Of a DNA stretch of 64,000 nucleotides, positions 16,343 to 48,876 are shown piece after piece. The stretch is from IMG/VR virus record IMGVR_UViG_3300044646_001937, positions 140,455 to 204,454 of that record. One strand, 5' to 3'. The notes under the pieces are model-generated. The model was not told the DNA's origin. It did not search any database and saw nothing but the letters and a program-made list of their open reading frames with translations. Position numbers and translations under genes: made by a program. Positions within the stretch are counted from its first letter, which is position 1, and each line of letters starts with the position of its first letter.

Positions 16343-16344
16343 CC

Positions 16345-16824: not shown

Positions 16825-16829
16825 ATATT

Positions 16830-18452: not shown

Positions 18453-18453
18453 A

Positions 18454-20268: not shown

Positions 20269-20293
20269 AATAAAACCAATATAATAATAATCT

Positions 20294-20860: not shown

Positions 20861-20863
20861 TAT

Positions 20864-22897: not shown

Positions 22898-22906
22898 TAT
22901 TAGATT

Positions 22907-23785: not shown

Positions 23786-23809
23786 TTGCTGTTAAAATAA
23801 CAAAATATT

Positions 23810-26800
23810 ATGGCAGCGCTGGAGTACCTAACGCAGAATAGTCTAACATCACATCCTTTTAAAAATTCTTATGGGCTTGAAGAGGGGACAGGTGCTGTCG
23901 ACGGTTGGTTTTACGACATTCTATTTGTTTCGTATGACGACTCTATTCGTAGAGTATACCTCCAAAAAATAGAAAAAAAGGAAAACGGCAGTTTAGAGAT
24001 AGGGATCAATAACGCTGAAACGCTAGCTAGGCTGCCTGAGGGTCTAATAACTATAGCCGCTGAAGATGTTGTAGATCATTATGCCAATAAAATAAAAAGT
24101 TTTGTAGGCGTAGCCAAATCAAAGTTTGCTATTAAGTTTGTGATTGGTCCAACTTTGGCGGCTAAAGAAGCTTTTTCAGAAAATTACCTACCTGCAGTAA
24201 CCGAACTTTCAAGCGATGTAACAGTATTAAACACTGTCAGGGTGAATTCTATTACATTTGAGGCTTATGACGGACCAATTTTAAACACTGTAAAGCTATA
24301 TACTGGAGAAGAAATAGCCCTAGTCGAGCCCAGATATAATTCAACATTTACACTAACAGACACAAGCTCCGGCGAGTTGAGTGTCTCCGCAGGTAGCGGC
24401 GCTGGACTGTATGACAATTGTCCAACCCCAGGAAGTATAACCGATGTTCATACTTTAAATGAAATACCACCAAACTCAGAAGGAACTTTATTTCTACATG
24501 CCACAGAGTGTCATTCATTAAATTTATTAACAACTAATGACGAACTTATATATGGTGATCAATTAGACACCTACAGATCATTTACTTCACCTGGTAATAC
24601 AGAACCGTTCAATGCAGTTAATCCAGAACACACTATAACTTTAGAGAATTTTTGCAGCGTTAAGTGTCCCCATGAAAACGTAAAAGCTTTAGCGTATTAT
24701 ATTAATCGTATAACTGACGGAGCTTCTGGACTAGCTGACATAGCGGTTAGAAATACAGAAACTAGAGGTATAGGTAGTGCTGAAGGAACAGAATTTCATG
24801 TAGATAATGCAGATTTCTGTGATGCTGCTGCGAACATATTCTTAAAATGCCCTGTAGATAGTGAAGCATTCATTCCATGCAATCAGGGTTTTATTAAATA
24901 TTTGCACGAAGGACGCACATTGCAGGTGTCCTACGATAACGCCACAATTACAAATTACACAATTGTTTCTGTGATTAATGAGAATACTGTATTACTAGAC
25001 GGCGCTCCGTCTGGAATAATGGGCAAAATCCCATTTAGGGTAATTGATAGTGGTGTTATAAGTAATATCAATTGCGCTAGCAGTCTTTATAACAAACAAA
25101 ATGACGATAAATTAAAACCATACTTTAAAGTAAGATACAGTACCAGTGAAGCATTCAATTCGGATTTTGAGTATGTCACATACGCAGCAATATCTGTAGG
25201 TGTATTTAATCCAGGTCCAGAACCTGTGCGACTCAATATAGCCTTTAATCCAAATGGACTAGGACAACAAGGCAGTTTTAAAATAAGAAAAACAGATTCA
25301 ATCTACGTTTCCAGCGAAAGTGTAGTTGACTTAGATTGTAAAGAGCACGCATTTGTAGAAGCAGTCTACTATATCAAGTGCGGAGAACCTGCCAGCAATT
25401 TTAGTATATTGGTAACAAACATTACAGCCAACCCAGATGAGATATTAGGAGATGGAGCATATTACCTACCTCCGTTAGTTGGTGTGAGTTGTCCAGGAGA
25501 CATAGCCGGAGCAATAAACACCGTGCAAATTGTAAAGCAAGACACGGACACATTTAGCCAAATCATTGGCGTTGATCCGTTAGTTCAAGATGTTAAAATT
25601 TATGGAACACTTCCTGATTGGTTGACTATAACATTTCAGCCAGCACAATCAGGACAGCCCAGCTCTTCACTAGTGCTTACAGGTACAAAAATATCTACAA
25701 ATAATTATAATACGGAATATAATTTGTATGCAAGATACACAGGCATTGCAATACCTGTGGTATCGCAGCTAGTTATTCAGTATGTGGCTCCGCCCATATT
25801 TATATATCCTACAGAGAAGTATTTTACTCAGGAAAAACCTCTAGTTATTGACCCGCTCATAATTTATACCGAAGAAAATCCACTAACGCAGCTTACTGTG
25901 AAAAACATGGATAAGCCGCTTAGCTGGAACGGTGACAATTTTAGTTCTTATGGAGTTGACGTAATTGCTGAACGCGAGCTACCTCAGGGACTAACGCTAG
26001 ACACGGTTACAGGAAAAATAACAGGAAGGTTGTTAGAGGGGGTAACGGACGAAGGATACTGGAAAATAGCTTTAACAGCTACAAATCCTGCAGGTATAGT
26101 TTCTCAAAATCTTTATCTGGGGGTATCCAAAAGAGCCATCCCTGTAATTTCTTTTTTACAGCAGTTACCTACAGTCATAGATAACTACACCCAATATACG
26201 ATTGAGGAGCCTTTGTGTTCGTTTAAAGCCACAAATGATCCTATCCTTCTATATCAGACGACAGATAAATTACCGTCAGGACTTAGACTGGACACCACCA
26301 AAGGCGTTATATATGGCAAGATTACTGAAACAGCAGCAGGAACCAAAACAATCAATGTTTACGCTAGGAATTTTTATGGAAAATCCATACTTCCGCTAGA
26401 AGTAACGATCTCATATACCATATATAAACAACCAGAAATTCAAGCGCCTACACAGTTTGCAAGATTTAATGGTGAGGACGGCTCCACACTAGAAGAGCCA
26501 CTATGTACAATAGTTGCAACACAAGCCTATGGAGGGCTTAATAATTTTGATCCGCTACTTACAGACGCCACACGCAATCATTACACAGCCACAAATCTAC
26601 CTCCTGGTTTTTCAGTAGATCTTTATACCGGTAAAGTCTATGGAATCCTAGATACTTCTGAAGGTTTTTCAAGAGCCTATGCGGTAACATTAAAAGCCTC
26701 TAATCTAGTTAATACCGCAACTGTACAAATTTACATTACATTTCCAAATGTAAAATTGCCTGTAATTACAAATTTGGCGAGTGGTAGTTTGTTTAAAGTT

Positions 26801-29800
26801 ACTAGGAACCTAGAGTATTCCGTAGAAGCTGGCCCACTGGCGTCAATATATGCGATCTATTTAGACCCTATAATTATCGCCACAGGTTTACCTGCAGGAT
26901 TAACCTGCCTACCTACCGGAGAAGTAGTAGGTATGGTAGACTCTTTGCTACCCGCCGGAGATTATACCGTTTCATTTAGGGCACAAAATAGATATGGAGT
27001 ATCCACCCCAGCTATTGTATGTATCGTACGAGTGGGGATTGAGCTACTTAGCCCACTACCTAACTCAATGTTAAACTTATCTGTGAATGCACAGATTACA
27101 CCAATACAAATTACAACAAGCCAGGGTGTGCCAGTAACACTTACAGTCAGGAATTTACCGGCAGGGCTAACATTTAATAATTCACAAATATACGGCACAC
27201 CGGTTACAGTCGGCAGATCTAAAATATACATAACCGCGTCGGCTGGAGTCTTCGGTATAATAAAAGCCGTCATAAACGTATCCGTGTCAATTCCCACATA
27301 TAGTCTTTCAGGTGCAGTTGTGGGTGTCGACTTAGCAGCGGCAACAAATGTTTTTTTAACCATAACCAGTGTAGAAACTGGCGCTATATACACAATAAAA
27401 ACTACAAGCACGGGCACATACCAACTTAATGGGCTGTATGCAGGGATATACAACGTATCCGCCCGTAAGGATCGATTTGAAATAGAGCCAATCACAAGAA
27501 CAATTACAATTGTAAATACGGATGTTGCATTGCAGAGTTTTTTAATTACAGGACCATACAGACTTATAGTCGGTACAGTAACCAACGCAATTAATAAAAG
27601 CGGTGTAGAGAACGTGGCGATAATTACATTTAATAGGACTGTGTACACAGATACAGCAGGCAGGTTTTTTATAAATTTATTACAGAACGAAGAAATCACA
27701 ATTACTGCGGATGCTGTTTCTTATGTGTTTAATCCAAAAACAATAGATATACCGATTAGTAATGAAGACTCAGGAGGTTATTCGTTTAAAGCCACTCCCT
27801 CGCACAATATTTCAGGAACTATAGTTTCTAAAAACATTGAAGTTCCTGCAAATATTGGAGTTCTGATAGACAATCAGAACACTGGAGAAAAATATTACGA
27901 TATAGCACCTGCAGGCAGCATTTCAGTGCAGGCACTTGACGGAAAATACAAAATATATCCTAACCCTGAAGCATCAGATTATTATAATAGTATATGGCAA
28001 TTTAAGCCAAAGTATATACCTGTAGAGGTGAATGGTCTGTCGATTCAACTAGCGAAATCGTTTAACATATTTTCAGGTAAAACAATATCAGGAAGAGTTA
28101 TTGCTCCGATATATGAAACAGAAATTGGTCTACCTATTCCTGTTGCTGGTGTGGCGATTACTGCCGCAAATATTACTCTAGATCAGACAAGGTTTATTTG
28201 GCTGAAGTTGGATGCAAACAATCCACCGACTATAAAGCTAGATCTAAAAACAATTAGAGCTGCCGCAGCATCCACTGAAAACATTCCTGTGACGGTTGAT
28301 TTTACAACAGGATTTTTTAATCTAAGAGGTACAACAGCAGGACAGCTTTCAATGGATGGATACACTGCGTCAGTAGAAGAAATAATTCTTCTGAAAGATC
28401 AATTTTATCCTGAGTTAAACGGAATATATACAATTGTAAACCCAGGCTCTGCAACAGAGACGTTCCATCTCGTCAGAAGTACTGAAGCAAACTACAATGA
28501 ATCTTTAAAAGTTGGTGCAGCAATATATGTAATTGGAGGCATCACAAACAGCGCTGCTACATATTATTTAACTACTGAAGATCAAGTTACAGCAATTTCA
28601 GATATAGATGGAAATTTCACACTGACAAACGTCTACCCAGACACTTACAACCTATACGCTCATAAAGAAGGTGTTGGTATATTAAGTATTCCTCAAGTCA
28701 ACGTATCCACGAATAATGCAACCAATCTAGTAATCGTGCCTAATACATATCAAATCACTGGCACGATACAGTATAGAGCGAATTATTTAAGCACGACGAA
28801 GACTCCGCTGACAGATGTTCGCATCAGTCTTTATAGAGCAAAAGATTTATTCTTACTTAAAAAAAGCGAGAAATCAAAAGCAGACGGCTCATGGATATTT
28901 AGATCTGTACCTGACGGAGACTATATATTGAAAGCTGAATTTAGAGGAATGACACCTACAGTAGTTGAACAAAAAATTACTGTAGATGATGGCGATGTTA
29001 ATCTGGTTGCCATGGAAGTGTATATAGCTGTTTTTACAGCACCATCCGCACCTATAGTAAATAACATACAGGGTGGTTATAGGTCACTAAAGGTGACAGT
29101 GAGCGAAAACCCAGAAGACATAGGTACAGAAATCCGCTATTACGAATATTCGCTAGACTCAGGCACAACATGGGCAACTGCAGTGAAAACTTCAGACAGC
29201 GAGATATTGATCCCCGATCTCCCTCCAGCAGAAAAAACTATCTTTAAATTAAGAGCCAGAAACTTATGGTCGTATGGACCTGAGGTTGAGCTGCAGGGTG
29301 TTGCATTTGACCGCCCTGGCGCACCTACAATTACAAGTATAGCGCGCAAAAATAAAGAGCTGTTGGTAAATTTTTCACCACCACTATTTTCAGGCGGGCT
29401 ATACATAGACAACTATGCATATTCCACAGACGGAGGTATCACTTTTTTACCTATTACTCCAGCAAACATAACTGGCTCATTTAGTATACTTAAAAGATCA
29501 AATAATGGGTTGGATTTGGTGAATGGTGAAAAATATCAAATAGTCCTTCACGCGCTAGCTGGAGAAGCTGCAGGTTTAGACTCAGAGCCGGAAATAACAT
29601 TCCCTGTAGGTACTCCTGGACCGTCGAGACTTCTGAGTGTTGTCGGCGGAAGATTGAATGAGCTAGATATAAGCTTTGAACCTCCAGAAATAACCAATGG
29701 TGCACCTGTGGCAGATTATGCATATTCTTTAAATGGAGGTCCATTTACACCATTAGGTACAGTTAACAGTCCCGCAACAATAACAAATTTACTCAACGGT

Positions 29801-30523
29801 ACAATCTATAGCGTGAGAGTCGCCGCAATCAATTCTGAAGGCGTCGGTGATGCCTCTAATTCAATTCAGGCAAGAGTTGGTGTAACTGCTGACGCTCCAA
29901 CTATATTTAAGGCAGAGCACGCAGGAGGAGGCAAACTAAGAATTTACATACAGCCTGGCGCTAATGGATTTTCACCAATAACAGGCTACGTTTATTACAT
30001 TGATTCCCCTGAAGGGGGCACAGAAAACAGCAACACAGCCACACCATTAGGCGGCCTTACACCTGACAACACTGCAATAGTGTATAGTAAACTTGATGGG
30101 CAGGGCGGAACAATTGGGACTATGTTTGAAGAGTCAAGATTGTACACAATCAGCATAGCTGCCGTTAATGAGTTTGGAACTAGTACAGCTTCTGAAAAAA
30201 TATCTTTTTTTGTAGTATATACAGCACCTCGCGCGCTAATAGTTAATTCGTATATAGAAGAGCATGATAGAGTCATATTCAACTTATCTTTTGAAAACAA
30301 TGACACAGGAGGCGCTGGAGGATATGTTACAATAACCAGTATAATTAGAGACTCTGATGGAAATATAATTACGGATACGTATGGAAATCCCTTGGATAAT
30401 CTTCAAACATACTATAATGTTTTCACTCGTTCAGAGTATACCTATACTGTAGCTGGGTTGACTGCAGGGGTTACGTATGATATCACAATTTTAACATCAA
30501 ATGCTGCAGGCACAGGAGCTTAG
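23810..30523 (+). CDS. Giant Ig/FN3-repeat virion protein (2237 aa)
   Basis: Paralogue domain at the N-terminus, then ~6 putative-Ig repeats (LPxGLxxDxxTGxIxG, ~25.5-27.3 kb). About 5 carboxypeptidase-regulatory-like sandwiches (xISGxV...TDxxGxF) and ~5 FN3 repeats (PxAP...YxYSxDxG...VxAxN) follow. Confidence 0.8.
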   Translation: MAALEYLTQNSLTSHPFKNSYGLEEGTGAVDGWFYDILFVSYDDSIRRVYLQKIEKKENGSLEIGINNAETLARLPEGLITIAAEDVVDHYANKIKSFVGVAKSKFAIKFVIGPTLAAKEAFSENYLPAVTELSSDVTVLNTVRVNSITFEAYDGPILNTVKLYTGEEIALVEPRYNSTFTLTDTSSGELSVSAGSGAGLYDNCPTPGSITDVHTLNEIPPNSEGTLFLHATECHSLNLLTTNDELIYGDQLDTYRSFTSPGNTEPFNAVNPEHTITLENFCSVKCPHENVKALAYYINRITDGASGLADIAVRNTETRGIGSAEGTEFHVDNADFCDAAANIFLKCPVDSEAFIPCNQGFIKYLHEGRTLQVSYDNATITNYTIVSVINENTVLLDGAPSGIMGKIPFRVIDSGVISNINCASSLYNKQNDDKLKPYFKVRYSTSEAFNSDFEYVTYAAISVGVFNPGPEPVRLNIAFNPNGLGQQGSFKIRKTDSIYVSSESVVDLDCKEHAFVEAVYYIKCGEPASNFSILVTNITANPDEILGDGAYYLPPLVGVSCPGDIAGAINTVQIVKQDTDTFSQIIGVDPLVQDVKIYGTLPDWLTITFQPAQSGQPSSSLVLTGTKISTNNYNTEYNLYARYTGIAIPVVSQLVIQYVAPPIFIYPTEKYFTQEKPLVIDPLIIYTEENPLTQLTVKNMDKPLSWNGDNFSSYGVDVIAERELPQGLTLDTVTGKITGRLLEGVTDEGYWKIALTATNPAGIVSQNLYLGVSKRAIPVISFLQQLPTVIDNYTQYTIEEPLCSFKATNDPILLYQTTDKLPSGLRLDTTKGVIYGKITETAAGTKTINVYARNFYGKSILPLEVTISYTIYKQPEIQAPTQFARFNGEDGSTLEEPLCTIVATQAYGGLNNFDPLLTDATRNHYTATNLPPGFSVDLYTGKVYGILDTSEGFSRAYAVTLKASNLVNTATVQIYITFPNVKLPVITNLASGSLFKVTRNLEYSVEAGPLASIYAIYLDPIIIATGLPAGLTCLPTGEVVGMVDSLLPAGDYTVSFRAQNRYGVSTPAIVCIVRVGIELLSPLPNSMLNLSVNAQITPIQITTSQGVPVTLTVRNLPAGLTFNNSQIYGTPVTVGRSKIYITASAGVFGIIKAVINVSVSIPTYSLSGAVVGVDLAAATNVFLTITSVETGAIYTIKTTSTGTYQLNGLYAGIYNVSARKDRFEIEPITRTITIVNTDVALQSFLITGPYRLIVGTVTNAINKSGVENVAIITFNRTVYTDTAGRFFINLLQNEEITITADAVSYVFNPKTIDIPISNEDSGGYSFKATPSHNISGTIVSKNIEVPANIGVLIDNQNTGEKYYDIAPAGSISVQALDGKYKIYPNPEASDYYNSIWQFKPKYIPVEVNGLSIQLAKSFNIFSGKTISGRVIAPIYETEIGLPIPVAGVAITAANITLDQTRFIWLKLDANNPPTIKLDLKTIRAAAASTENIPVTVDFTTGFFNLRGTTAGQLSMDGYTASVEEIILLKDQFYPELNGIYTIVNPGSATETFHLVRSTEANYNESLKVGAAIYVIGGITNSAATYYLTTEDQVTAISDIDGNFTLTNVYPDTYNLYAHKEGVGILSIPQVNVSTNNATNLVIVPNTYQITGTIQYRANYLSTTKTPLTDVRISLYRAKDLFLLKKSEKSKADGSWIFRSVPDGDYILKAEFRGMTPTVVEQKITVDDGDVNLVAMEVYIAVFTAPSAPIVNNIQGGYRSLKVTVSENPEDIGTEIRYYEYSLDSGTTWATAVKTSDSEILIPDLPPAEKTIFKLRARNLWSYGPEVELQGVAFDRPGAPTITSIARKNKELLVNFSPPLFSGGLYIDNYAYSTDGGITFLPITPANITGSFSILKRSNNGLDLVNGEKYQIVLHALAGEAAGLDSEPEITFPVGTPGPSRLLSVVGGRLNELDISFEPPEITNGAPVADYAYSLNGGPFTPLGTVNSPATITNLLNGTIYSVRVAAINSEGVGDASNSIQARVGVTADAPTIFKAEHAGGGKLRIYIQPGANGFSPITGYVYYIDSPEGGTENSNTATPLGGLTPDNTAIVYSKLDGQGGTIGTMFEESRLYTISIAAVNEFGTSTASEKISFFVVYTAPRALIVNSYIEEHDRVIFNLSFENNDTGGAGGYVTITSIIRDSDGNIITDTYGNPLDNLQTYYNVFTRSEYTYTVAGLTAGVTYDITILTSNAAGTGA

Positions 30524-30547
30524 TAGTAAATTAATATTTAAAGCCGT

Positions 30548-35869: not shown

Positions 35870-35937
35870 TGTTACTTATCTGGTTAAATGATTGCAAGAA
35901 GAGGAGCTATGGCTTATTATCTGTATGATATAGCTGT

Positions 35938-38900: not shown

Positions 38901-41900
38901 TCAATCTACAGGCAGGCTTGAAATTGTTATTACAAGTATCACAACTTCACCAGTTTCTGGTGCACTTGATAATTTGAGTAGTTGGGAAATAACGCACGCG
39001 TTAAGGAAAAAAACATATATAGATAAATTTATTAGTATCCTATACGGTTACACTAATAATTATTTTAGCTCAGCGAGCAACACAAAAAGACCCACAATTT
39101 ATGTTGGCAATCTTGCCGAAGCTCAGGCATACAGTATATGGTTACGTACCAGTAATACACTTTATGGTAAAGGTCCCATAATTAAGCTAAGCGGAACCAC
39201 AACAGCCTTACCCAGTAGCCCGCCCACAGTTGATGTAAAGCTGACAATAGCAGGATTTGATATAGATATTAGTCCAGGATTTGCGGAAAAAGCATGGATA
39301 CAAGCGCCACAGGCAGCTATTCAAGGTTATGAATATGCAATAATAAGCGGAAACGTATGGTATGACGTTGATGTAACTCCAACATGGAACACATTAAACA
39401 ATGGTGTAATTACGGGGTTGACTCAAAATGCCGAATACATGCTCAGTTTTAGATCTGTTTCGGCTAATGGAGCGGGTCCAGCTACAGTGCCTAAAGTGTA
39501 TAAAACAGCCTCTTTGCCTCTTAAAATAACCAGTCTGACAGGATTCATGCCTTTGATCGGTATTACCGAAATAGTTCTTCCTTCAGAAATAGTTTTATCG
39601 GCAATCCCCTACACTATTGAATATGAATTGGAGCAAGGGTATTACGATAAATTAGGTAGATATATAGATGACCCTACTTTAGCTGGTAAAACCGGCATTT
39701 TAGCAGATAACTCGCTATTGAATCTGTACACAGATTTAACTGCAACAGCAATATTCAATGAAACGCAAATTAACAGTATCCGCACGTATTTTGTAAAACT
39801 TAGATGTGTTAATGAGGTGGGACAAGGACCTTGGTCCGATACATTCATATTATCAGTACTTTCACCAGAAATTAGACCTGTTAAAGTAAAGTGGTCTCCG
39901 GGTCCTTCATGCATACTTATTGATGAGATAGGTTTGATGGATACTGAGCTAAAGTTGAACTTAACTAGAGGTACAAGACCCGCAGAAATAAAGACACTTA
40001 ATTCTGCGGTAAGATGGCAATACGCAAAAGTAGTAACCGTCGCCCCCAGAATACTTACAGACAACCGCATATATTACACAGGTAACGAGCAAAAATATAC
40101 TGATGCAGGGCAAGAAGAGCCCGTCATTCATTTAAAAAATGCCCTAGCGGCAGTTGAGTGGCAGAATATCGTATCAAACACAATACCCATGGAAGACGAG
40201 CAAAGCGTTATACTACTCTTCAGAGCAGCTAACGCAGCCGGAGGTATCGAGATGACTGATGTGTTAGGCTATGACGGCGCTTATAGTAGATTTACTTACA
40301 ATCCCATAGAACCGTACGGATTTGCGTCAAAGTATTTTCAAGACGGTCCAGAGTTTGATACCTACCATAGAACTAAAAGCATTTATCAGTACGACACTGA
40401 TCGCCCCAACCGTTGCTATGGAGCTTTATTTAAAAAAACCAGCTTCTCAGCAAACTGCCCATTACCACGACTTGCCTATAACAAGTATGGTAGATATATC
40501 AAATATCAAGAAGAGTTATTTTCACCTTTCTTTAACCTTGAAGAAAGGACAATTAAGACGCAACCATTTTTGGATTTTGAATTATCTTACGTTAAAAACT
40601 ATGAGCAACTCGGAGGAATTAACGATACAGTATACACCTCTCCCATGCTTACCTGTACAGAATTACCTTGCGAGCTAGGTGTAAGCTCATCTGTGCAGGT
40701 TAGTGCAGCAACTGAAGACATTTTGGCCCCCAATGATTTTGTTATTATCACCGACTCATTAACTGGAGGGGTTGCTCACCGTTACGCATTAGCTTACGTT
40801 AAAAGCGTTGATGAAATTGACGAATCCAACAAAACTAAAAGCGGATATAAAATTTTCTGGCTCAATGAAGAGACGACTGCAGCAGCATTAGGTAGTGGGT
40901 TTATGTCACCATGGCCTGAAGGCTTACCCACATCAGTGTATAACGTTGTGGATAGCTCTTCATTCCGCCTACACACATTAAGTGAACTTCAGCCAAAATT
41001 TGCAAAAGATCCATGGACCATAACTTCAGGGTATCTCCCTGTATCTAACACACCAGGGATAATTGCCGCATTTAAAACTACATCTAATTTATTTTCAGGA
41101 GCATTACCTTTTCGTGATGCTGACGGTAAAGACTTTTGGAGCGTAACATTAAACATGAGTATGACCAATTATTTTGAAAATACTTATGTAGGTATAAAAG
41201 TTTACAAATATAATAATAACCCAAACCAATATGCAACAAACACTTTAACTTTACTTGGAGAATCTAGGTTTTTCAGATCAGAAGAACCTGATATTAATGT
41301 TTTCGCGCAATACAACGCAGTGTTTTTTATACCTGAAGAAGGTATTATTTTTGACATATATGACGAGATCTATCTTGAAATATTTGCATGCATTAAGCCA
41401 AACACACTTACACATCCCCCCGGTACATTAAGCACGCAACATACAGTTACAATTAAATTTGATAGCAGTTCTTATTTAAGTACAACGATACCTAAAGATT
41501 TTAAATACAGAGATCAAATGGTAACGTTCGACGTTTTAAGGATTGGTCGACTAATACCGTCTAATAGAGCATTTTATACACCTTCAGCAGGTGCCCGCTC
41601 ATACATAAATAAGTACGCTGCGAGTGTAGGTTTTCTTATACAAGGAAACGTTAACTGGGCGTCTCTTCGACAAAGTCTTGAGCAGATGCTGCCTGTATAT
41701 AGACCATATGATTTATTTCCAGCACAGTCACCCATAGCAATCGAGCAAGGCCTTGTCGGCGATTCTTGGTCTCAAGGAAATTCCTATGAGCTAGTGACTC
41801 TTGTACCTAGTAGGTATTACACTGACCCTTTAACTCCATCGATAGTTAATGGTTCAGTTTTTAAGGTAAATGGAAATACTCCGGCAGAGTACTCGTTATT

Positions 41901-44900
41901 CTCTGACGGGAAATTAACTAGTGTCCCTGCATTAAAAATAATTACACCAATATCTACAGCTATAAGTGACAAGTATAGTGTATCGGAATGGTTGCACGGC
42001 TATCTAGAAAACAACACATTCAAAGGAGCATCTACGCGTACTGAAAAAGTTTATCGCGCTACGTACGTAGACCAATTTAATAATGTTACGGAAGAAGGCT
42101 ATGATGGTATCCCTACATATAAATACGCTAAAGACGATGTAGTTATACATTATATTGATGTTTACGATACGCAAAATCAGCATTCAAGAGAATCAGTACT
42201 TTATAAGTCTAAAGTAGACAACAACGACAATCCTATATATGACACAGACTATTGGGAGCCTATAACATTACCAGGAGTCAGTAAAGTGGACGGTCAACAT
42301 CCTATACTGCCTGTCCCAGTGATTACCTACTCAATACAACCACCTGACCCACCTATAGTCGTAGACATTATTGAAGAGCATAACCGCATAGGTTTTGTAA
42401 TTAAGCCCCCATATTTTAAAAAATATAAAAATAATTCAACCCAAATAGATGACTTTTTGAGTGCGAATTATTATGACGGAGGAATGGCAAAAGACAGTCC
42501 ACTGGTATTTAGAGCCAATAAATCAATAGGTCTCACAAATCACAAATCACCAGAAGCTCAAGGAATAAGCCTTGAATCAATGCTGCCCACCCTGCGCTTT
42601 AAGTACCCCGCAGCAGGTATAAGCACTGTACAATTTAATAGAAATAATTCAAGTACTTTATTTGCATTTGATAAATACATTGTAGCTGGAGATAACTTAT
42701 ATATAAATGCACCTGGCCAACTTCCAGCTTTATCTAAAGGCTATACTATAAAAAGTATTAGTACGTTGCAGAACGGTTTGTGTGTAATTGAATATTATGA
42801 TGATTTTGCCACGGCGGATAAAAGCTCTTTTGAATTTAACTTTATATTTGGTGGAGGTCATAGCGTATATGTGACTCACAATCCTATAAATGACCACGTA
42901 TTGGTGCCAGACACTACAAAATCAAGATATGAGACAAACACATATTGGTTAAATAACTGTCTTGAAGACGAAGAGTACCTCATAACTATAAGACTAGATA
43001 ATGGCTGGAAACCTAAATTGCAAAAAATAGAAAACACCTACACTAAGGTATATAGAGTTAGAACAAAGAAAATAACGCCACCAGCGCCAGCAATTGATAG
43101 TATTCAATATGACGGTAGTGTATTTAAATTAAATTTTACTTACGGCAGCAGTCCTGTACCCTTGTATTACAATTGGCAAGAGTTGTCCGCTAACGATTAT
43201 ACAGAACTGTCGACCACTGTAAGACAATTACCATTCTACTACGGTATTTCGTTTGCAACCGTAAACGAAACAGTTCTCGCAGGAGGGGAGGCAACCATCA
43301 CAAGGACTAGGTACCGCACAGGATCCTTGGCCCCCATATACAAAGATTATGCAACAAATTACTGGCAGCAGTTGCTGGATATGCGTCAGGACATTACATT
43401 TTCTGCATATAGATGGCCTACAGACGCAGAATTACAGGATATTGAAAGTCAATATAGTCCTGCCGTCTGGCCTACAGGTAAAGAAAGTTATTTGAATGAT
43501 CGAGCTGATAAATGGTTTAGTAGATACAAAATACCTATAGATGCCTACGCGAATAAATCTACGCCAGGCAGCGTGACTGATGTAAAATACTACACCCCAA
43601 ATGCGTCATATCCTTATGATGAACAAGGGGTAATGGCGTTATCTACACAAACAGACATTTACTCAAGCAATCCTATGCTCTTGTCTCCTGTAGGTATTAA
43701 AAACGATCCTAGAGGGCGAGCGTATTTAACAGCATACCGAAGATACTGGGATGATGAGAATTATAAAATTCCCTCTGACGCAATTAGCTCGCTATCTAGT
43801 AATACTGATACATTTGGAGAAAGACCCACACATATACCCATATATTCTCCAACAGGTAAGACATTGCGTGACGATAATAAAGTTTGCGGTTTATTGTACA
43901 CTTCTGACGAGTATTTTAACAAACATCCCTATTATCAAGATTATGCCGATTCAATATACCTCTCAATATATAGGGCACCGTTTAGACGAAAAGCTGCCAA
44001 CAATGCCGTAAATAACATACATGCAGATATAGATTCATCTGGGTATAGCTACAGTCATATTAACTTTCCTGTACGCGCAACACTCGGAAGCTCAAAATAT
44101 ACTAACAATCAACAGATTACTTTAAACTCAAATGGTTTTTATAGTGTACCCTCGATTTCCTCGATCCCCAACTCAGATACTACATACTACAGCTCTTCCT
44201 ATGTAGACACATATTTTGGTATACCTGCTGCGATTAATTATTTTTTAACTACAAACATTGAAGATTACATTCCGTTATATAGAGAAACAGCCGTGGTTAG
44301 ATCAAATTTAAGTGAGGACCTACTGGAGTCTCAACGTGTACTAGCTGTAGTTAAATATGATAACTCTCCTTACACAGAAATTATATCCACAGCTTTTCCT
44401 GGGCTAGCCTTCAATAGACGTAAAGATTACGAAGCTTCAGAAATAGATGTACCCATCACAGATAATTTAAATTTATTTTCAGAAATAGCTGCAAACTACT
44501 ACACGGATTGGTTTGCAAATGACCTCTATGTACCACCCAAGAAAAAATATTCAAACTTTGAAACCTTTTCTGCTATAGAGCAAGAGGAGTTTCACGCTGT
44601 GTCAGATTTTGCGGTACTTAAATCTTATAATAGAAATATTCCCACATATGCAGTTTATGTCTGCCAGTCCCAGAATATTTGCTGTGTGATGTCTTCAGGC
44701 AATTTAAACGGTATAAGTAAGAACGAAAACGACAATCCGTCAGATACCTTTTCGTCGCTGCTGCCTTTTGAGCATAGACCTTATATCAGTAATCAGACAC
44801 CCTTTGTTGAGTGGGGATTTAGGCGTAACTACTTTCAAACTCTTGACTATGGCTATAGTAAAAGCTTTCTTGACTACGACAGGTACGTTTGGCCCGTTCT

Positions 44901-46788
44901 ATCTGAAGGAAATATCAAAGATCCCAATAGGACAGGAGCTGCTCCAACATACCCAGCGTCACACATGTCACCCATCGAATTGTCAGGGGCATACGACGCA
45001 TCATGGTCCGCCAGAAACACCATACAGCTAAACAAGAATATTTCAGGAGATATGGTTGGGGAAAACATTAAAAATTTAAAAATGTCTCAACCTACCCATG
45101 TAGCAATTGACGGGCAAGGTAACATATATATTTCTGATACTGGAAATAAAAAGATTAAATTACTCACCAGATCAGAAACAATTAAAGACCCCAACCTGCA
45201 CGAGAGTGATATTAAAAATTTAATTAATTATACTTCGGCAAGAACGATAAGTACTTTAGATGAGTTTCCTGGACAGCTTGAAGTTAGTGACGACGGAAAC
45301 ACCATCACCTTCCTAGCTGGCGGAAAACTATACCGCAGAATCAAGGGTGTAAATTATTTAATTACAGGTGAAAATTTAAATACCACCAATAAAACACCTG
45401 CAAAAAATTATCAATGGCCTGTGTACAGTGCCGCATGGGGTAGGTCTCTACCGGAAGACTACGGTAAAGAATTTATATCTAGCTTTATTCAGACAACTAA
45501 TGGAAGTACAATATTCTTCAGTAACGGTAGAGGCAAGGTTGTAAAAATTAATTGCATGACTAATTTAGACAAAATTGCTTATGTAGAATACTCTTTTGAC
45601 AACATAACATTTACGAAATATTCCGAAACCACAGGCATCCCAGTACCTAATGTGCAGTTAGGTACAGCTATACCTATGTATTTTAGGACTGTGTCTACGG
45701 ATAATGTACGAAGCACTACAGTACAATTAACTACAGATCCGTATTTAAAGGCAAACGAAAGTGTAGCCGTATCCTCAGTGACAGCGGCCCTGCAATTTAA
45801 AGCAACCGATTATTTTACGCATAAAGACGGGACTACACAACGCAGGGCAAGATATCTAGTTACACCACCATCAATAGTTACATCACTTTCCGAAGGGGAA
45901 AATTTTCCTAAAAATATAATAACGCTCGTGCAATCAACTAGAGTTACATCTGTAAATAATAGCGCATTTGTTATCGCCGAAGCTAAACAAAGATTAAACT
46001 ATGTACAAAAAATAATGCGGCTAAAATCTACTACAGCAGCAGATCTAGTTAAACTTAAAAAAGAAGAAGAGTTGGCTCTTAAATTAATTGCAAGCCCTTC
46101 ACTGGATGTAAGAACCTCCGATGCATGGAGATTCAGAAATGTTTCTTCTGCCCCTATATCTGGAATTTCTAAATATGATTTCCTCGAAATGGATGTAACG
46201 ATTAAATTTACGGCAAGCAGGAATACCGGTATCACCTCAATAAACCCAACGCCAATACCCTACACCGATTACATCGTAATCATCAAAAATATTACAAAGA
46301 ATAGGGTTTTTGAAATAACAGGCGACGCAACTAAATATAAATATATTAAATCAAAAGAAATAGATCCTGCGTCCGGGGTTATAACATACGTTGTCAGATT
46401 CTACAACGACACCTACGTTACCGAGAGTAATCCAAGATTTAAACATTGGAGAACACGCCCGATATTCACAGATTCAGAGCCTCCAGCGTACGAGTACCAT
46501 AGAGTGCCTAGACAATTAAAAAAATTCGGCAATTACACCAGTCCAATAAATCTAGGCCAATCTTACATTAGACCGGCAGACGCAGCGCTTGATAGAGGTT
46601 GGTATTCTAATGAGTATGTGGAGTTTTCAGGTCCTGATTTTTCTAAAGGAGACACTTTAGAAATATATATTGTTCCGGACAAAACAAAATACTCTAAGCG
46701 AGCAAGTTACACACCATATACTATAACTATGAGTGACGCAACTAACCTGCAGCTTACTGGAGCTAAAGGACAATCAGTGGTTTACTAG
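35938..46788 (+). CDS. Giant (3616 aa) beta-rich virion protein with scattered FN3-like and NHL-like elements
   Basis: Uninterrupted 10.85-kb ORF, Y/T/S/P/N-rich. FN3-like signatures (FRSVSANGAG, LRCVNEVGQG, PPDPP, PPAPAI) and an NHL-like PTHVAIDGQGNIYISDTGN. Confidence 0.8.
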   Translation: MEKTSLIEYKLKSYLGGVLAKLKYVNSPLTPLTKVEYSFDGVTWTELSSQAFSNTIIAQDPVTPYIYTIERIFVPLAEYRDYLISFRLTNTVATGAQSIPGIGRRGGPPEALVVKPTLTRLPYMNRYTNVAFSVFSTLSSTVVGKMIVTFEYDPMLDGGSGSTPITDVLISLDSRQTWLQPDTLEVFKTTKQSNVVETYVAGDTNRTFSGIGTFVRVSYTLPQGGDFTYLQDSPIYYKTINFAGESPAIKIVTKLPLVIVTSPNNPDYPILNKIESSDWYFGSNQEVRRDLQVYLELPESTGFGEPYQLQSTQLLDLAELTPVSVTPPEGQQALKNIDLTVTTVGDTFRRGERLKIYSQANPSKIWFIAQVTSNSRVNPVLSLDILEKYAVTPYSISVNSFANGADEFHKNTPLWNIHNHPINYPLLDLYVGDQLRDDDVFVSGRTLSFFRKDISFNDIYFYATIISKDINIGKLTIKITSKSDCLQNNCHNNQSFLTSWEITPIMTSADTFPTEANDWVIEPLYPVLEARYNLAEASNPNSIIEKGTAGLTIIKDDNNIPTLGYFTIRGISDIETYALNMTYGPAGAEFLSRLSPTSTIQCSLLSIAQKVTFLPIRTYTEAVYTNEFVSWWYLSKLTPLVSQTEIKFKLPLAPNDNSTIAVAYRKIVRTEIENIEGITTPSSLYEGRVVGELNFVALQSTPTTDALREITFPIDEATHLNNEGRRVEISYEISFLKIIRNLTSNNEELLTELNKLKDKIPGDIVKTTISIPGAQPIDFVLGRELLNPTAIGLTLVYNDQLPGYEYLDFKDTQAQDITLKQTDFYRSTIEYSTNQGGSWRHVLKPGIPAYDEKFSQVNTTYYQNIGADIITFTEENYNVYPAGTLLSGETIQDYTYVVEALDAFSVRISKPQKASAFSPAVKSSVLAKYTGTSTTYTRFQKGTAIMYVDKYLDYTTDLPVKIANTTLTGAANIIAQRPYMLGNVKNYNQSTGRLEIVITSITTSPVSGALDNLSSWEITHALRKKTYIDKFISILYGYTNNYFSSASNTKRPTIYVGNLAEAQAYSIWLRTSNTLYGKGPIIKLSGTTTALPSSPPTVDVKLTIAGFDIDISPGFAEKAWIQAPQAAIQGYEYAIISGNVWYDVDVTPTWNTLNNGVITGLTQNAEYMLSFRSVSANGAGPATVPKVYKTASLPLKITSLTGFMPLIGITEIVLPSEIVLSAIPYTIEYELEQGYYDKLGRYIDDPTLAGKTGILADNSLLNLYTDLTATAIFNETQINSIRTYFVKLRCVNEVGQGPWSDTFILSVLSPEIRPVKVKWSPGPSCILIDEIGLMDTELKLNLTRGTRPAEIKTLNSAVRWQYAKVVTVAPRILTDNRIYYTGNEQKYTDAGQEEPVIHLKNALAAVEWQNIVSNTIPMEDEQSVILLFRAANAAGGIEMTDVLGYDGAYSRFTYNPIEPYGFASKYFQDGPEFDTYHRTKSIYQYDTDRPNRCYGALFKKTSFSANCPLPRLAYNKYGRYIKYQEELFSPFFNLEERTIKTQPFLDFELSYVKNYEQLGGINDTVYTSPMLTCTELPCELGVSSSVQVSAATEDILAPNDFVIITDSLTGGVAHRYALAYVKSVDEIDESNKTKSGYKIFWLNEETTAAALGSGFMSPWPEGLPTSVYNVVDSSSFRLHTLSELQPKFAKDPWTITSGYLPVSNTPGIIAAFKTTSNLFSGALPFRDADGKDFWSVTLNMSMTNYFENTYVGIKVYKYNNNPNQYATNTLTLLGESRFFRSEEPDINVFAQYNAVFFIPEEGIIFDIYDEIYLEIFACIKPNTLTHPPGTLSTQHTVTIKFDSSSYLSTTIPKDFKYRDQMVTFDVLRIGRLIPSNRAFYTPSAGARSYINKYAASVGFLIQGNVNWASLRQSLEQMLPVYRPYDLFPAQSPIAIEQGLVGDSWSQGNSYELVTLVPSRYYTDPLTPSIVNGSVFKVNGNTPAEYSLFSDGKLTSVPALKIITPISTAISDKYSVSEWLHGYLENNTFKGASTRTEKVYRATYVDQFNNVTEEGYDGIPTYKYAKDDVVIHYIDVYDTQNQHSRESVLYKSKVDNNDNPIYDTDYWEPITLPGVSKVDGQHPILPVPVITYSIQPPDPPIVVDIIEEHNRIGFVIKPPYFKKYKNNSTQIDDFLSANYYDGGMAKDSPLVFRANKSIGLTNHKSPEAQGISLESMLPTLRFKYPAAGISTVQFNRNNSSTLFAFDKYIVAGDNLYINAPGQLPALSKGYTIKSISTLQNGLCVIEYYDDFATADKSSFEFNFIFGGGHSVYVTHNPINDHVLVPDTTKSRYETNTYWLNNCLEDEEYLITIRLDNGWKPKLQKIENTYTKVYRVRTKKITPPAPAIDSIQYDGSVFKLNFTYGSSPVPLYYNWQELSANDYTELSTTVRQLPFYYGISFATVNETVLAGGEATITRTRYRTGSLAPIYKDYATNYWQQLLDMRQDITFSAYRWPTDAELQDIESQYSPAVWPTGKESYLNDRADKWFSRYKIPIDAYANKSTPGSVTDVKYYTPNASYPYDEQGVMALSTQTDIYSSNPMLLSPVGIKNDPRGRAYLTAYRRYWDDENYKIPSDAISSLSSNTDTFGERPTHIPIYSPTGKTLRDDNKVCGLLYTSDEYFNKHPYYQDYADSIYLSIYRAPFRRKAANNAVNNIHADIDSSGYSYSHINFPVRATLGSSKYTNNQQITLNSNGFYSVPSISSIPNSDTTYYSSSYVDTYFGIPAAINYFLTTNIEDYIPLYRETAVVRSNLSEDLLESQRVLAVVKYDNSPYTEIISTAFPGLAFNRRKDYEASEIDVPITDNLNLFSEIAANYYTDWFANDLYVPPKKKYSNFETFSAIEQEEFHAVSDFAVLKSYNRNIPTYAVYVCQSQNICCVMSSGNLNGISKNENDNPSDTFSSLLPFEHRPYISNQTPFVEWGFRRNYFQTLDYGYSKSFLDYDRYVWPVLSEGNIKDPNRTGAAPTYPASHMSPIELSGAYDASWSARNTIQLNKNISGDMVGENIKNLKMSQPTHVAIDGQGNIYISDTGNKKIKLLTRSETIKDPNLHESDIKNLINYTSARTISTLDEFPGQLEVSDDGNTITFLAGGKLYRRIKGVNYLITGENLNTTNKTPAKNYQWPVYSAAWGRSLPEDYGKEFISSFIQTTNGSTIFFSNGRGKVVKINCMTNLDKIAYVEYSFDNITFTKYSETTGIPVPNVQLGTAIPMYFRTVSTDNVRSTTVQLTTDPYLKANESVAVSSVTAALQFKATDYFTHKDGTTQRRARYLVTPPSIVTSLSEGENFPKNIITLVQSTRVTSVNNSAFVIAEAKQRLNYVQKIMRLKSTTAADLVKLKKEEELALKLIASPSLDVRTSDAWRFRNVSSAPISGISKYDFLEMDVTIKFTASRNTGITSINPTPIPYTDYIVIIKNITKNRVFEITGDATKYKYIKSKEIDPASGVITYVVRFYNDTYVTESNPRFKHWRTRPIFTDSEPPAYEYHRVPRQLKKFGNYTSPINLGQSYIRPADAALDRGWYSNEYVEFSGPDFSKGDTLEIYIVPDKTKYSKRASYTPYTITMSDATNLQLTGAKGQSVVY

Positions 46789-46838: not shown

Positions 46839-48152
46839 ATGTCGATAGTCGCCTTAACTCACAACAATAAAAACCAGTACAGGAAGTATCCATTCAAACA
46901 AGGAGCTTCACTTAAAACTGTACAAGGGCGCACATTATCGGATGCAGTAATTGTCAACATATCTCTCACAAGCACTTACGGAAGACACAGGGTTTATGTA
47001 AAACAAGTTTTTTACAAAGACAGCACCATGACTGTAACAATAGCTTCAGTCTTTGATGATACTGTGTTAGGGGCATTTTACGGGGACGTTACAGAAGATT
47101 TTACAACATTATCGCTAATACCCTTTGTAAGGTTTGTCAGCGGGAATATCACACTAGGATCATTAAACGCACTAGATTCAATTACTGCGATATTGAATTT
47201 TACAGCAGCCAATAGTGAATTGGAAGAATCTACGATATTTTGCTATAAGGTACCAGGAGTAACCAGTATAAATGACTCAAAGAAAAACCAGGTTAGAGGT
47301 AATGTTAATTTCGGTAATTTGACAAATCTAGATAAAGCAACTTCAACTGGTAGCGTGCTGTTTACTGTGGTAAACACCACAAGTATTCAAAACACTTCAG
47401 ATAGGTCTTCTTATTTTGGAAACTGTGCCACGCCAATAATAAAAACAATTAACGGCGTCTACCCTATGAGCGCTGTAGAAAACACCCCTACAGACAACGA
47501 TGGCAATCTGTATCTTGTAGGAGTGAAGCCTGTAGTTTTTTATGGTACTCCAGGGCAGGACGACACGATGACTCCAGGTAACCTGAAAATTGATGCTGAA
47601 AATATGACAATCAGTACACTGTGTACTGAAAAGTATAAAGCAATCCCACCAGTGAACGTGTCTGGTTTTACAACAGCAGAAAGTAAAAATCTTTATTTCA
47701 ATAAACCGGATTTGTTAAAAAACTCTCAAGCCGCCATATATCCTTACACAATACCTGCAAGAGTATCCTCTAATGTGTTCGATGTTAAATTACCAGAATA
47801 CTACTATTGGCCTCAATATGTAAAACCAGAGTACTATAACGAATGGCAATTATTGGTACCTTCTACACCAACAATCACATCAGTTGTACCAACCAGCTAC
47901 GGTGCTGCAGTATATTTCACTCCTCCTAAAAATCCTAGCGTCTCAGGCATTACATTCTACAGCTATAGCATAGACAATGGCACAGATTGGAGGACGCTTA
48001 CAAATGTAACAAACCCATTCAATATATCTAATCTATTGCAGCCGGAGACAGACTATTATTTAATACTTAAAGCCCATAACTCTCTGCTATCTGCGGGCGG
48101 AGGAGAACCATCAGCACCGTTTAAATTTACGACACTACCATACTCAAATTAG
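46839..48152 (+). CDS. Paralogue family member 3 with C-terminal FN3 domain
   Basis: NNKNQYRKYPF and TINGVYP motifs; C-terminal PSTPTITSV...YSYSIDNGTDW...YYLILKAHN. Confidence 0.75.
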   Translation: MSIVALTHNNKNQYRKYPFKQGASLKTVQGRTLSDAVIVNISLTSTYGRHRVYVKQVFYKDSTMTVTIASVFDDTVLGAFYGDVTEDFTTLSLIPFVRFVSGNITLGSLNALDSITAILNFTAANSELEESTIFCYKVPGVTSINDSKKNQVRGNVNFGNLTNLDKATSTGSVLFTVVNTTSIQNTSDRSSYFGNCATPIIKTINGVYPMSAVENTPTDNDGNLYLVGVKPVVFYGTPGQDDTMTPGNLKIDAENMTISTLCTEKYKAIPPVNVSGFTTAESKNLYFNKPDLLKNSQAAIYPYTIPARVSSNVFDVKLPEYYYWPQYVKPEYYNEWQLLVPSTPTITSVVPTSYGAAVYFTPPKNPSVSGITFYSYSIDNGTDWRTLTNVTNPFNISNLLQPETDYYLILKAHNSLLSAGGGEPSAPFKFTTLPYSN

Positions 48153-48159
48153 ATTATTT

Positions 48160-48873: not shown

Positions 48874-48876
48874 TTT

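What the first reader, a model, noticed from the sequence alone, without database searches (positions are those of the whole stretch)
23810..46788. 23 kb devoted to three giant Ig/FN3 proteins (7,626 aa in total)
Seen: consecutive ORFs of 2237, 1773 and 3616 aa built from putative-Ig, carboxypeptidase-regulatory-like and FN3 modules, about 36% of the window. The first ends exactly at an FN3 final strand and the next two begin with FN3-like segments. Established: Ig-like/FN3 domains decorate many tailed phages and bind surface glycans or mucus, usually in one to a few copies. Inference: a titin-like fibre system produced by expansion and fission, possibly from host adhesin genes, for long-range host capture.
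Basis: partly seen in the sequence, partly recalled or inferred. Interest (0 to 1): 0.7.

Follow-up and report, generated by a model that had tools for sequence, protein, structure and literature searches.

The report
Giant baseplate-linked fibre genes, jumbo phage
Three huge neighbouring genes in a 204-kb freshwater jumbo phage fill a hyper-expandable slot beside the baseplate genes; two encode strings of Ig-like adhesion modules, and the largest (3616 aa) is almost entirely an unknown protein.

Summary
Contigs from four public runs reproduce both gene junctions. The genome is a circularly closed ~204-kb jumbo phage from lake water.

G1 and G2 are Ig-like arrays. G1 has a novel core, then 5 He_PIG-like, at least 4 CarboxypepD_reg-like and 5 FN3 modules. 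G2 has 10 FN3 modules. G3 is not such an array by any test run. Only about 7% of it is FN3-like, and it has one NHL-type blade. It has one relative in the databases searched, and both AlphaFold2 models failed (pLDDT 27).

In related phages the same slot, between conserved baseplate-side genes, holds from 786 to 7626 aa. This window has the largest load. G1's first ~240 aa are shared with three small flanking paralogues; G2 and G3 lack that domain.

The best reading is a set of baseplate-anchored adhesion fibres in a fast-evolving host-recognition slot. Expansion is supported. Fission is shown only in the sister phage, where one nonsense codon splits G3. A host-adhesin origin is not supported. 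This is a new variant of a known kind. G3 is the interesting unknown.

The parts
16345..18452 (+). gp25-like (159 aa) and gp6-like (540 aa) baseplate wedge genes that open the conserved module upstream of the slot
   Evidence: Weak PHROG hits to phrog_975 and phrog_6. The same gene order occurs in all relatives and in Vibrio phage D69.
22907..23785 (+). 292-aa gene, the conserved left border of the slot; it carries the shared N-terminal domain
   Evidence: 57-64% identical orthologues lie directly before the giant gene in every related locus where it was looked for. hhalign matches it to the 437-aa family (99.1%), the 299-aa family (97.9%) and G1's N-terminus (94%).
23810..30523 (+). G1, 2237 aa: the clade-wide anchor protein
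   Evidence: ORF. Family of about 10-13 relatives, 33-39% identical and colinear over aa 1-1335.
23816..24538 (+). G1 aa 3-243: N-terminal domain shared with the 292-, 437- and 299-aa paralogues (putative docking module)
   Evidence: hhalign probability 94%, E 1.4e-7, 216 columns. No PDB or Pfam match.
23810..25849 (+). G1 aa 1-680: conserved core of unknown fold with 11 invariant cysteines
   Evidence: Alignment A3. It is nearly the whole protein in the minimal 786-aa version in L017. The Atlas search was uninformative.
25856..27247 (+). G1 aa 683-1146: five He_PIG-like Ig modules
   Evidence: Pfam He_PIG at 55.9 bits against a cut-off of 24. Iterative HMM map.
27305..28729 (+). G1 aa 1166-1640: at least four CarboxypepD_reg (transthyretin-like) modules
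   Evidence: Pfam at 68.1 bits against a cut-off of 32.3. The family profile hits the NOMO2 Ig-array structure at E 4e-25. HMM map.
29036..30520 (+). G1 aa 1743-2237: five FN3 modules, the last ending at the C-terminus
   Evidence: Pfam fn3, titin FN3 in the PDB at E 6e-17, HMM map. ESMFold2 pLDDT is about 80 for aa 1930-2237.
30548..35869 (+). G2, 1773 aa: ten FN3 modules (aa 29-119, 344-455, 704-1227 with five modules, 1355-1643 with three) plus unassigned stretches and a lambda-J-type Ig motif at aa 660-694
   Evidence: Pfam fn3 at 107 bits and Ig_J_second at 39 bits. PHROG minor tail protein families. HMM map. 58% identical and colinear with the sister orthologue.
35938..46788 (+). G3, 3616 aa: lineage-specific giant, about 90% of it without any assignable domain
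   Evidence: No Pfam or PHROG hit. One relative at 49% identity, colinear over aa 1-3217. Residues 1301-3616 have no homologue in five related phage genomes. The AlphaFold2 models failed.
35971..36237 (+). G3 aa 12-100: FN3-like module
   Evidence: hhalign 92.6%. HMM.
39205..39846 (+). G3 aa 1090-1303: two FN3-like modules
   Evidence: hhalign 95.9% and 47%. HMM.
45067..45537 (+). G3 aa 3044-3200: one canonical NHL-type propeller blade (aa 3044-3076) followed by degenerate blade-like segments; the most conserved part of G3
   Evidence: Hits to PknD and Pizza propellers in the PDB, E 4e-5. 10,687 repeat-driven hits that carry Pfam NHL. 80-94% identity to the sister phage. G3's own Pfam NHL score is 16.7 bits, below the cut-off of 20.
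45676..46785 (+). G3 aa 3247-3616: C-terminal domain, a separate 362-aa ORF in the sister phage
   Evidence: 63% identity to L001 19787-20872. In the sister phage a TAA replaces Tyr3218, whose codon is at window 45589-45591.
46839..49776 (+). Conserved right border of the slot: 437-aa (shared N-domain plus a C-terminal FN3), 237-aa and 299-aa (shared N-domain) genes
   Evidence: 40-73% identical orthologues follow the slot in each related locus whose sequence reaches that far. hhalign.

Best explanation
G1, G2 and G3 fill a hypervariable host-recognition slot at the end of the baseplate gene module. The genome is an uncultivated ~204-kb freshwater jumbo phage with myovirus-type baseplate genes.

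G1 is the anchor. Its conserved N-terminal core includes a ~240-aa domain that it shares with three small neighbouring paralogues. That domain most likely docks G1 on the baseplate periphery. From the core, a string of at least 14 Ig-like beta-sandwich modules projects outward as a long flexible stalk.

G2 has ten FN3 modules and G3 has none of the docking domain either. They probably either extend G1 end to end or bind other baseplate partners. G3's NHL-type blade region and its C-terminal domain are the candidate ligand-binding end.

The likely function is weak, multivalent, reversible adhesion to host-surface or particle glycans. That would enlarge the capture radius before irreversible binding.

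Shown: the genes, their domain content, their conserved position, the 786-7626 aa range of the slot, and the shared N-terminal domain.

Inferred: presence in the virion, docking on the baseplate, serial assembly, and glycan binding.
For: Position:
- The trio lies immediately downstream of the gp25-like and gp6-like baseplate genes, on the same strand, with 24-68 nt gaps and no intergenic terminators.

Domain content:
- G1 and G2 carry adhesion-type Ig-like modules above Pfam cut-offs.
- Their nearest PHROGs are minor tail proteins.

Comparative evidence:
- The slot between the conserved 292-aa and 437-aa orthologues holds 786, 1284, 1445, 2418, 3063, ~3480, 4062, 2448+1611, 3068+1689, 7585 and 7626 aa in related phages.
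- Modules are added distally in a nested order: core, then He_PIG-like, then CarboxypepD_reg-like, then FN3.
- G1 aa 3-243 is homologous to the N-terminal domain of the 292-, 437- and 299-aa neighbours. G2 and G3 lack it.
- G1's core is phage-specific.

Assembly:
- ESMFold2 gives weak support for contact between G1's C-terminal end and G2's N-terminal end. The score is 0.34 against a best control of 0.00. That mark was reached by 51 of 78 solved complexes and 2 of 108 mismatched pairs. Partner pLDDT was at least 62, and the runs agreed in at least 95% of contacts.

The genes are real:
- The sequence is reproduced in independent lake-water runs.
Against: - There are no virion proteomics or images.
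- The baseplate assignments rest on weak PHROG hits, with E-values of 2e-4 and 2e-5.
- The phage also has a separate cluster of at least five collagen-like tail-fibre genes at 63-77 kb of the genome. Those could be the true tail fibres.
- G3's fold is unknown because both AlphaFold2 models had pLDDT 27.
- By the tool's own calibration, the complex score belongs to the class that is more often wrong than right unless the guess was likely beforehand.
- The shared N-terminal domain has no known structural relative that would prove a docking role.
- The oligomeric state was not tested.
Confidence: 0.55

Rival explanations
1. G1-G3 are virion decoration fibres on the head, neck or collar rather than on the baseplate. 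In this reading they are Hoc-like or whisker-like Ig-array adhesins, and the collagen-like proteins encoded elsewhere are the real tail fibres.
For: - Ig-like arrays are typical of decoration proteins (established knowledge; review PMC7602432 listed).
- A separate cluster of collagen-like tail-fibre genes exists.
- The Goslar study describes collar filaments as well as tail fibres.
Against: - The gene position between baseplate-module genes is strictly conserved in every relative examined.
- PHROGs gave only tail or generic virion-structural families for G1-G3, nothing head-specific.
Confidence: 0.15
2. Only G1 is a structural baseplate-periphery protein. G2 and G3 are independent, interchangeable receptor-binding proteins that attach separately, for example to the 437-aa FN3-bearing paralogue. 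They do not form one serial fibre.
For: - Related phages do without G2 or G3.
- G2 and G3 lack the shared N-terminal domain.
- The 437-aa family carries an FN3 similar to G2's modules.
- Support for a G1-G2 contact is only weak.
Against: - G2 and G3 have no identified attachment domain of their own.
- G1 ends, and G2 and G3 begin, with the same module type.
- The complex score is above all controls.
Confidence: 0.2
3. G3 is not a virion protein. It is a lineage-specific acquired gene with another role, for example a secreted or infected-cell-surface protein, or it is decaying cargo.
For: - G3 is absent from all other clade members examined.
- It has no structural-protein homology.
- Its C-terminal part is cut off by a nonsense codon in the sister phage.
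Against: - A 3616-codon frame is kept open and colinear at 49% identity between two diverged phages. Local conservation reaches 94%.
- It sits inside the structural operon.
- It carries FN3-like modules related to those of G2.
Confidence: 0.1

Closest known systems
Ig-like/FN3 additions to phage structural proteins (T4 Hoc; FN3 and Ig modules in lambda J; FN3 strings in the T5 pb4 straight fibre)
   Same: - G1 and G2 carry FN3, He_PIG and transthyretin-like Ig modules on tail-associated proteins.
- G2 matches Pfam Ig_J_second and PHROG minor tail protein families.
- The presumed role is weak glycan adhesion (the roles of the known proteins are from my own knowledge).
   Different: - The known cases have one to a few modules. 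Here at least 27 recognisable modules are spread over three proteins totalling 7626 aa.
- There is no homology to the rest of J, pb4 or Hoc.
- G1, G3 and the 8-kb stretch 16001-24000 gave no BLAST match in 50,697 phage records.
T4-type multi-gene long tail fibre (gp34-gp37), and paralogous baseplate-periphery proteins
   Same: - Consecutive genes after the baseplate module might assemble end to end.
- Neighbouring paralogues share a domain.
   Different: - No sequence homology was detected.
- T4 fibres are trimeric beta-structured rods, not Ig-module strings (own knowledge).
- Serial assembly here has only weak computational support.
DUF7941 'fiber cloud' paralogues of chimallivirus Goslar (bioRxiv 10.64898/2026.04.21.720040)
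   Same: - A jumbo phage with its own multisubunit RNA polymerase.
[quoted passage not shown]
   Different: - The shared N-terminal domain here matches no Pfam family.
- The extensions are Ig-module strings within single giant polypeptides, not head-to-tail polymers of small subunits.
Titin, NOMO and bacterial giant adhesins (beads-on-a-string Ig arrays)
   Same: - The best solved-structure matches of G1 and G2 are titin FN3 (E about 1e-17).
- The G1 family profile matches the NOMO2 Ig-like array (E 4e-25).
   Different: - The similarity is generic, at the level of the module family.
- G1's core is phage-specific.
- Module identities are at most 31% within the genome.

Membership tests
Pfam fn3 (PF00041) | Score above the gathering cut-off of 25 bits | tested here: met
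   G1 scores 56.2 bits and G2 scores 107.1 bits. This applies to G1 and G2 only.
Pfam fn3 (PF00041), for G3 | Score above the gathering cut-off, or a strong profile match | tested here: inconclusive
   Pfam finds no family in G3. A locus-built FN3 profile matches three stretches by hhalign at 95.9%, 92.6% and 47%, together about 7% of G3.
Pfam He_PIG (PF05345) and CarboxypepD_reg (PF13620) | Score above the gathering cut-offs of 24 and 32.3 bits | tested here: met
   G1 scores 55.9 and 68.1 bits. These modules are absent from G2 and G3.
NHL-repeat beta-propeller (PF01436) | Several blades above the 20-bit cut-off that form a closed propeller | tested here: inconclusive
   G3 scores 16.7 bits for one blade. 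phmmer matches PknD and Pizza propellers at E 4e-5. Only aa 3044-3076 is clearly a blade. No usable structure model is available.
Phage tail fibre or receptor-binding protein | Encoded in the tail or baseplate module | tested here: met
   The genes lie directly after the gp25-like and gp6-like genes, and this synteny is conserved in every relative examined.
Phage tail fibre or receptor-binding protein | Present in the virion and binds a host receptor | not testable with these tools
   The phage is uncultivated and the host is unknown.
Phage tail fibre or receptor-binding protein | Homotrimeric fibre architecture | not tested
Lambda J-type tip attachment protein | J-specific domains beyond the Ig modules | tested here: not met
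   Only Ig_J_second matches, at G2 aa 660-694 (39 bits). No other J-family domain was found.
Goslar DUF7941 fibre proteins | DUF7941 domain | tested here: not met
   No Pfam family matches G1, the 292-, 437- or 299-aa proteins or their relatives at E up to 1. This assumes the model is present in the library copy used.
Host-derived bacterial adhesin | Close homologues in bacterial chromosomes | tested here: not met
   G1's core has one hit among 185,579 species' genomes: a 4.5-kb contig, 26% identical over 312 aa. The best protein hits are on phage-sized contigs. The origin of G2's FN3 array was not searched separately.

The most novel reading that the evidence does not exclude
G3 would be a new class of giant phage host-recognition protein, about 3,300 residues of previously unseen folds. 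It would be carried at the tip of a G1-G2-G3 chain assembled end to end from Ig-module strings. Such a chain would give this freshwater jumbo phage tethers a few hundred nanometres long. Their length would be set by a genomic slot that can grow or shrink ten-fold between relatives.
Probability: 0.15. Interest if true: 0.7.

Novelty: new variant of a known kind. Interest (0 to 1): 0.45.

Why it matters
Ig-like modules on phage particles are well known. Here a single syntenic slot ranges from a 786-aa core to 7.6 kaa in three genes, which is 11% of a 204-kb genome. That gives a natural series for asking how fibre length and module number tune host capture in dilute lake water.

G3 is one of the largest ORFan-like proteins one could choose for structure discovery. 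The shared N-terminal domain of four neighbouring genes is a candidate new baseplate-docking module.

Tried and rejected
Structure and look-alike searches that gave nothing usable:
- AlphaFold2 on G3 aa 1301-2500 and aa 2417-3616, with alignments of 2-3 sequences, gave mean pLDDT 27. The models are unusable, so no fold searches were run.
- Three ESM Atlas searches (G3 middle, G1 aa 1-600, G3 C-terminus) returned only low-scoring viral hypothetical proteins.

Sequence searches that found no relatives:
- BLAST against 50,697 phage records found nothing for 16001-24000 (blastn), G3 or G1.
- G3 has no relative in IMG/VR.
- The profile of the shared N-terminal domain matched nothing in the PDB or Pfam.

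Ideas tested and rejected:
- Read-through of G1 into G2 (same frame). Four stop codons lie between them.
- L012's single 4062-aa protein as the unsplit form of the 2448+1611 or G1+G2 pairs. It is colinear only to about aa 2434, and the rest is unrelated.
- Recent tandem duplication. FN3 modules are at most 31% identical to each other, G3 has no internal sequence repeats, and there are no DNA repeats.
- The 'moraphage' lineage (PMC12619734) as this clade. Moraphages lack RNA polymerase genes, whereas this phage has them.

Technical failure:
- A window-by-window hhalign scan timed out and was replaced by a whole-protein run.

Not run:
- The third word-based homologue search, for G2, so the origin of G2's FN3 array was not examined separately.
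Full report
**The observation**

The window holds three consecutive + strand ORFs at 23810-30523 (G1, 2237 aa), 30548-35869 (G2, 1773 aa) and 35938-46788 (G3, 3616 aa). Together they take up 35.9% of the window.

G1 and G2 share a reading frame, but TAG TAG TAA and a further TAA separate them. They are therefore distinct genes, not one gene read through.

The region has no DNA tandem repeats. Contigs from four public runs were laid over 30300-36299. Two of them, from different studies, cover the whole 6 kb with no differences, although one may be the source sample. Contigs from the other two cover the G1|G2 junction and the G2|G3 junction with no indels.

**The genome**

The window is the last 64 kb of a single 204,454-bp contig. 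The contig has a 127-bp terminal overlap, so the assembly is circularly closed. It has 40.6% GC, seven tRNA genes and a tmRNA gene.

It encodes split multisubunit RNA-polymerase beta/beta-prime-like proteins of the kind found in phiKZ-like jumbo phages. The nearest isolates are Salmonella phage Arash and Vibrio phages D69, D181 and D148, at about 30% identity in that subunit. No isolated phage gave a match to G1, G3 or the 8 kb just upstream.

Near-identical sequence occurs in lake-water and freshwater metagenomes, and in one crustacean-associated metagenome.

**Domain content**

Pfam places He_PIG, CarboxypepD_reg and fn3 in G1, and fn3 plus Ig_J_second in G2. It finds nothing in G3. PHROGs behave the same way.

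Iterative HMMs built from the locus and its relatives give these maps:

| Protein | Residues | Content |
|---|---|---|
| G1 | 1-680 | core of unknown fold |
| G1 | 683-1146 | five He_PIG-like modules |
| G1 | 1166-1640 | at least four CarboxypepD_reg-like modules |
| G1 | 1743-2237 | five FN3 modules, the last ending at the C-terminus |
| G2 | 29-119, 344-455, 704-1227 (five modules), 1355-1643 (three modules) | ten FN3 modules |
| G3 | 12-100, 1090-1184, 1226-1303 | three FN3-like modules, 7% of the protein |

Profile-profile comparison of the G3/orthologue alignment confirms only those three FN3-like stretches. It finds no He_PIG or CarboxypepD_reg modules. G3 has no internal sequence repeats.

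Against solved structures, G1 and G2 match titin FN3 generically. The G1 family profile matches the NOMO2 Ig-like array.

G3 matches only a propeller blade. An exhaustive search of G3 aa 2417-3616 returned 10,687 hits. Apart from the orthologue, all listed hits come from one NHL-type blade at about aa 3044-3076. G3's own Pfam NHL score is below the cut-off.

Both AlphaFold2 models of G3 failed with mean pLDDT 27. The fold of about 90% of G3 is therefore unknown.

**Relatives and the slot**

G3 has one relative among the proteins searched: a 3232-aa protein, 49% identical. The two are colinear over aa 1-3217. That relative lies in a sister phage with the same trio of 2241, 1750 and 3232 aa, plus a 362-aa ORF. 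That search considers only proteins of 0.55-1.75 times G3's length that share short exact words with it. Only the C-terminal 1200 aa were searched exhaustively.

The 362-aa ORF is the equivalent of G3 aa 3247-3616, at 63% identity. The split is caused by one TAA in place of Tyr3218, within sequence that is otherwise conserved and in frame.

G1 has a wider family. About 10 proteins and 13 IMG/VR loci are 33-39% identical and colinear over aa 1-1335, on contigs up to 198 kb.

In the related loci examined, the same genes precede the slot: a sigma-like gene, gp25-like, gp6-like, a gene of about 600 aa, one of about 188 aa, one of about 680-800 aa and one of about 295 aa. Where the sequence reaches the far side, genes of about 350-440, about 240 and about 305 aa follow it.

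| Locus | Giant gene(s) in the slot (aa) |
|---|---|
| L017 | 786 |
| L014 | 1284 |
| L011 | 1445 |
| L018 | 2418 |
| L008 (same contig as L006) | 3063 |
| L010 / L013 | 3485 / 3479 |
| L012 | 4062 |
| L016 (same as L005) | 2448 + 1611 |
| L015 / L007 | 3068 + 1689 |
| Sister phage (L001, L002) | 2241 + 1750 + 3232 + 362 = 7585 |
| This window | 2237 + 1773 + 3616 = 7626 |

Module content is nested. The core comes first, then He_PIG-like, then CarboxypepD_reg-like, then between 0 and 17 FN3 modules.

G3 aa 1301-3616 has no homologue in five of these genomes, three of which are at least 90% complete.

**Expansion and fission**

Expansion of the slot is well supported by the series above, but it is not recent. 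FN3 modules within this genome are at most 31% identical to each other. Each G2 module that could be scored has a positional orthologue in the sister phage at 41-85% identity.

The near-equal totals of 4062, 4059 and 4010 aa are coincidental. L012's single protein is colinear with L016's first gene only to about aa 2434, and the remainder is unrelated.

The only direct case of fission is the nonsense codon in the sister phage's G3.

**A shared N-terminal domain**

hhalign shows that G1 aa 3-243 is homologous to the N-terminal domain of the 292-aa family (94%, E 1.4e-7). That domain is also shared with the 437-aa family (99.1%) and the 299-aa family (97.9%). G2 and G3 lack it.

The domain has no PDB or Pfam relative. 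Four neighbouring genes therefore share one module and differ in what they carry beyond it. This pattern fits a common docking site. The DUF7941 paralogues of phage Goslar are a conceptual precedent but not a homologue.

**Origin**

G1's core is essentially absent from 185,579 species' genomes. The only hit is one 4.5-kb contig, 26% identical over 312 aa. Its protein relatives sit on phage-sized contigs. A host-adhesin origin is not supported for G1. It was not separately tested for G2's FN3 array.

**Mechanism**

The best reading, with confidence of about 0.55, has three parts:
- G1 is a baseplate-anchored stalk of Ig-like modules.
- G2 and G3 either extend G1 end to end or attach separately.
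- The set acts as long adhesion fibres.

ESMFold2 gave weak support for contact between G1 aa 1930-2237 and G2 aa 1-460. The score was 0.34 against a best control of 0.00. That mark was reached by 51 of 78 solved complexes and 2 of 108 mismatched pairs. Partner pLDDT was at least 62, and the runs agreed in at least 95% of contacts. The tool rates such a pass as weak.

The main caveat is a separate cluster of at least five collagen-like tail-fibre genes at 63-77 kb of the genome. G1-G3 are therefore not the only fibre candidates.

**Verdict**

The ORFs are real, and two of the three are Ig-like arrays. The system is a new variant of a known theme, Ig-module decoration of phage tail proteins, at unusual scale and in a demonstrably elastic slot. 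G3 remains a very large protein of mostly unknown fold, and it is the most interesting target.

Noticed in passing
window 51359-51757 (+): A full-length tmRNA gene is encoded by the phage. ARAGORN predicts a 31-residue tag peptide ending in ...ELLAA, and Rfam RF00023 scores 148 bits. Its origin and role were not examined.
   Followed up: partly
window 15293-15925 (+): A sigma-factor-like gene (phrog_351; Pfam Sigma70_r3 in the orthologues) sits inside the structural module, just upstream of the baseplate genes. It is conserved in the two relatives checked.
   Followed up: no
L001 19697-19699 (sister phage); equivalent to window 45589-45591: A single TAA replaces Tyr3218 of G3 and splits it into 3232 + 362 aa. 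The 29 codons between the stop and the next ATG stay in frame and conserved. The same protein appears in two independent assemblies, JGI and ENA.
   Followed up: yes
genome C1 63369-77279 (L004 3369-17279), outside the window: A run of eight same-strand genes of 416-815 aa. At least five of them hit collagen-like or tail-fibre PHROGs, giving a second set of candidate host-recognition proteins.
   Followed up: partly
genome C1 118825-125232 (L003 825-7229), outside the window: Split multisubunit RNA-polymerase beta/beta-prime-like genes of the phiKZ-type jumbo-phage kind. They are about 30% identical to Salmonella phage Arash and Vibrio phage D69.
   Followed up: partly
window 5349-7844 (+): An 831-aa protein with a weak DUF2345 (VgrG C-terminal) match, possibly the baseplate spike. 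The 1203-aa ORF at 8701-12312 has no hits at all and sits in a stretch of strong GC and AT skew.
   Followed up: no
whole genome: Shine-Dalgarno cores occur upstream of only 9% of called genes, against 11% in an in-gene background. This hints weakly at a Bacteroidota-type host, but the start calls were crude. The one bacterial-assembly hit to G1 was binned with an Aquaspirillum MAG.
   Followed up: partly
L010 20507-22987 and L013 20489-22969: In these relatives the 437-aa right-border gene is itself enlarged to 826 aa. Expansion is therefore not confined to the G1 gene.
   Followed up: no
window 32504-34593 (G2): A crustacean-metagenome strain differs at 8 sites in G2. Five of the changes are nonsynonymous, and three of those lie in FN3 modules. 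The number is too small to infer selection.
   Followed up: partly
window 55372-56484 and 58980-60581 (+): Two AAA-type ATPase genes lie downstream of the structural block (phrog_14322 and phrog_8638). The same arrangement occurs in relatives.
   Followed up: no
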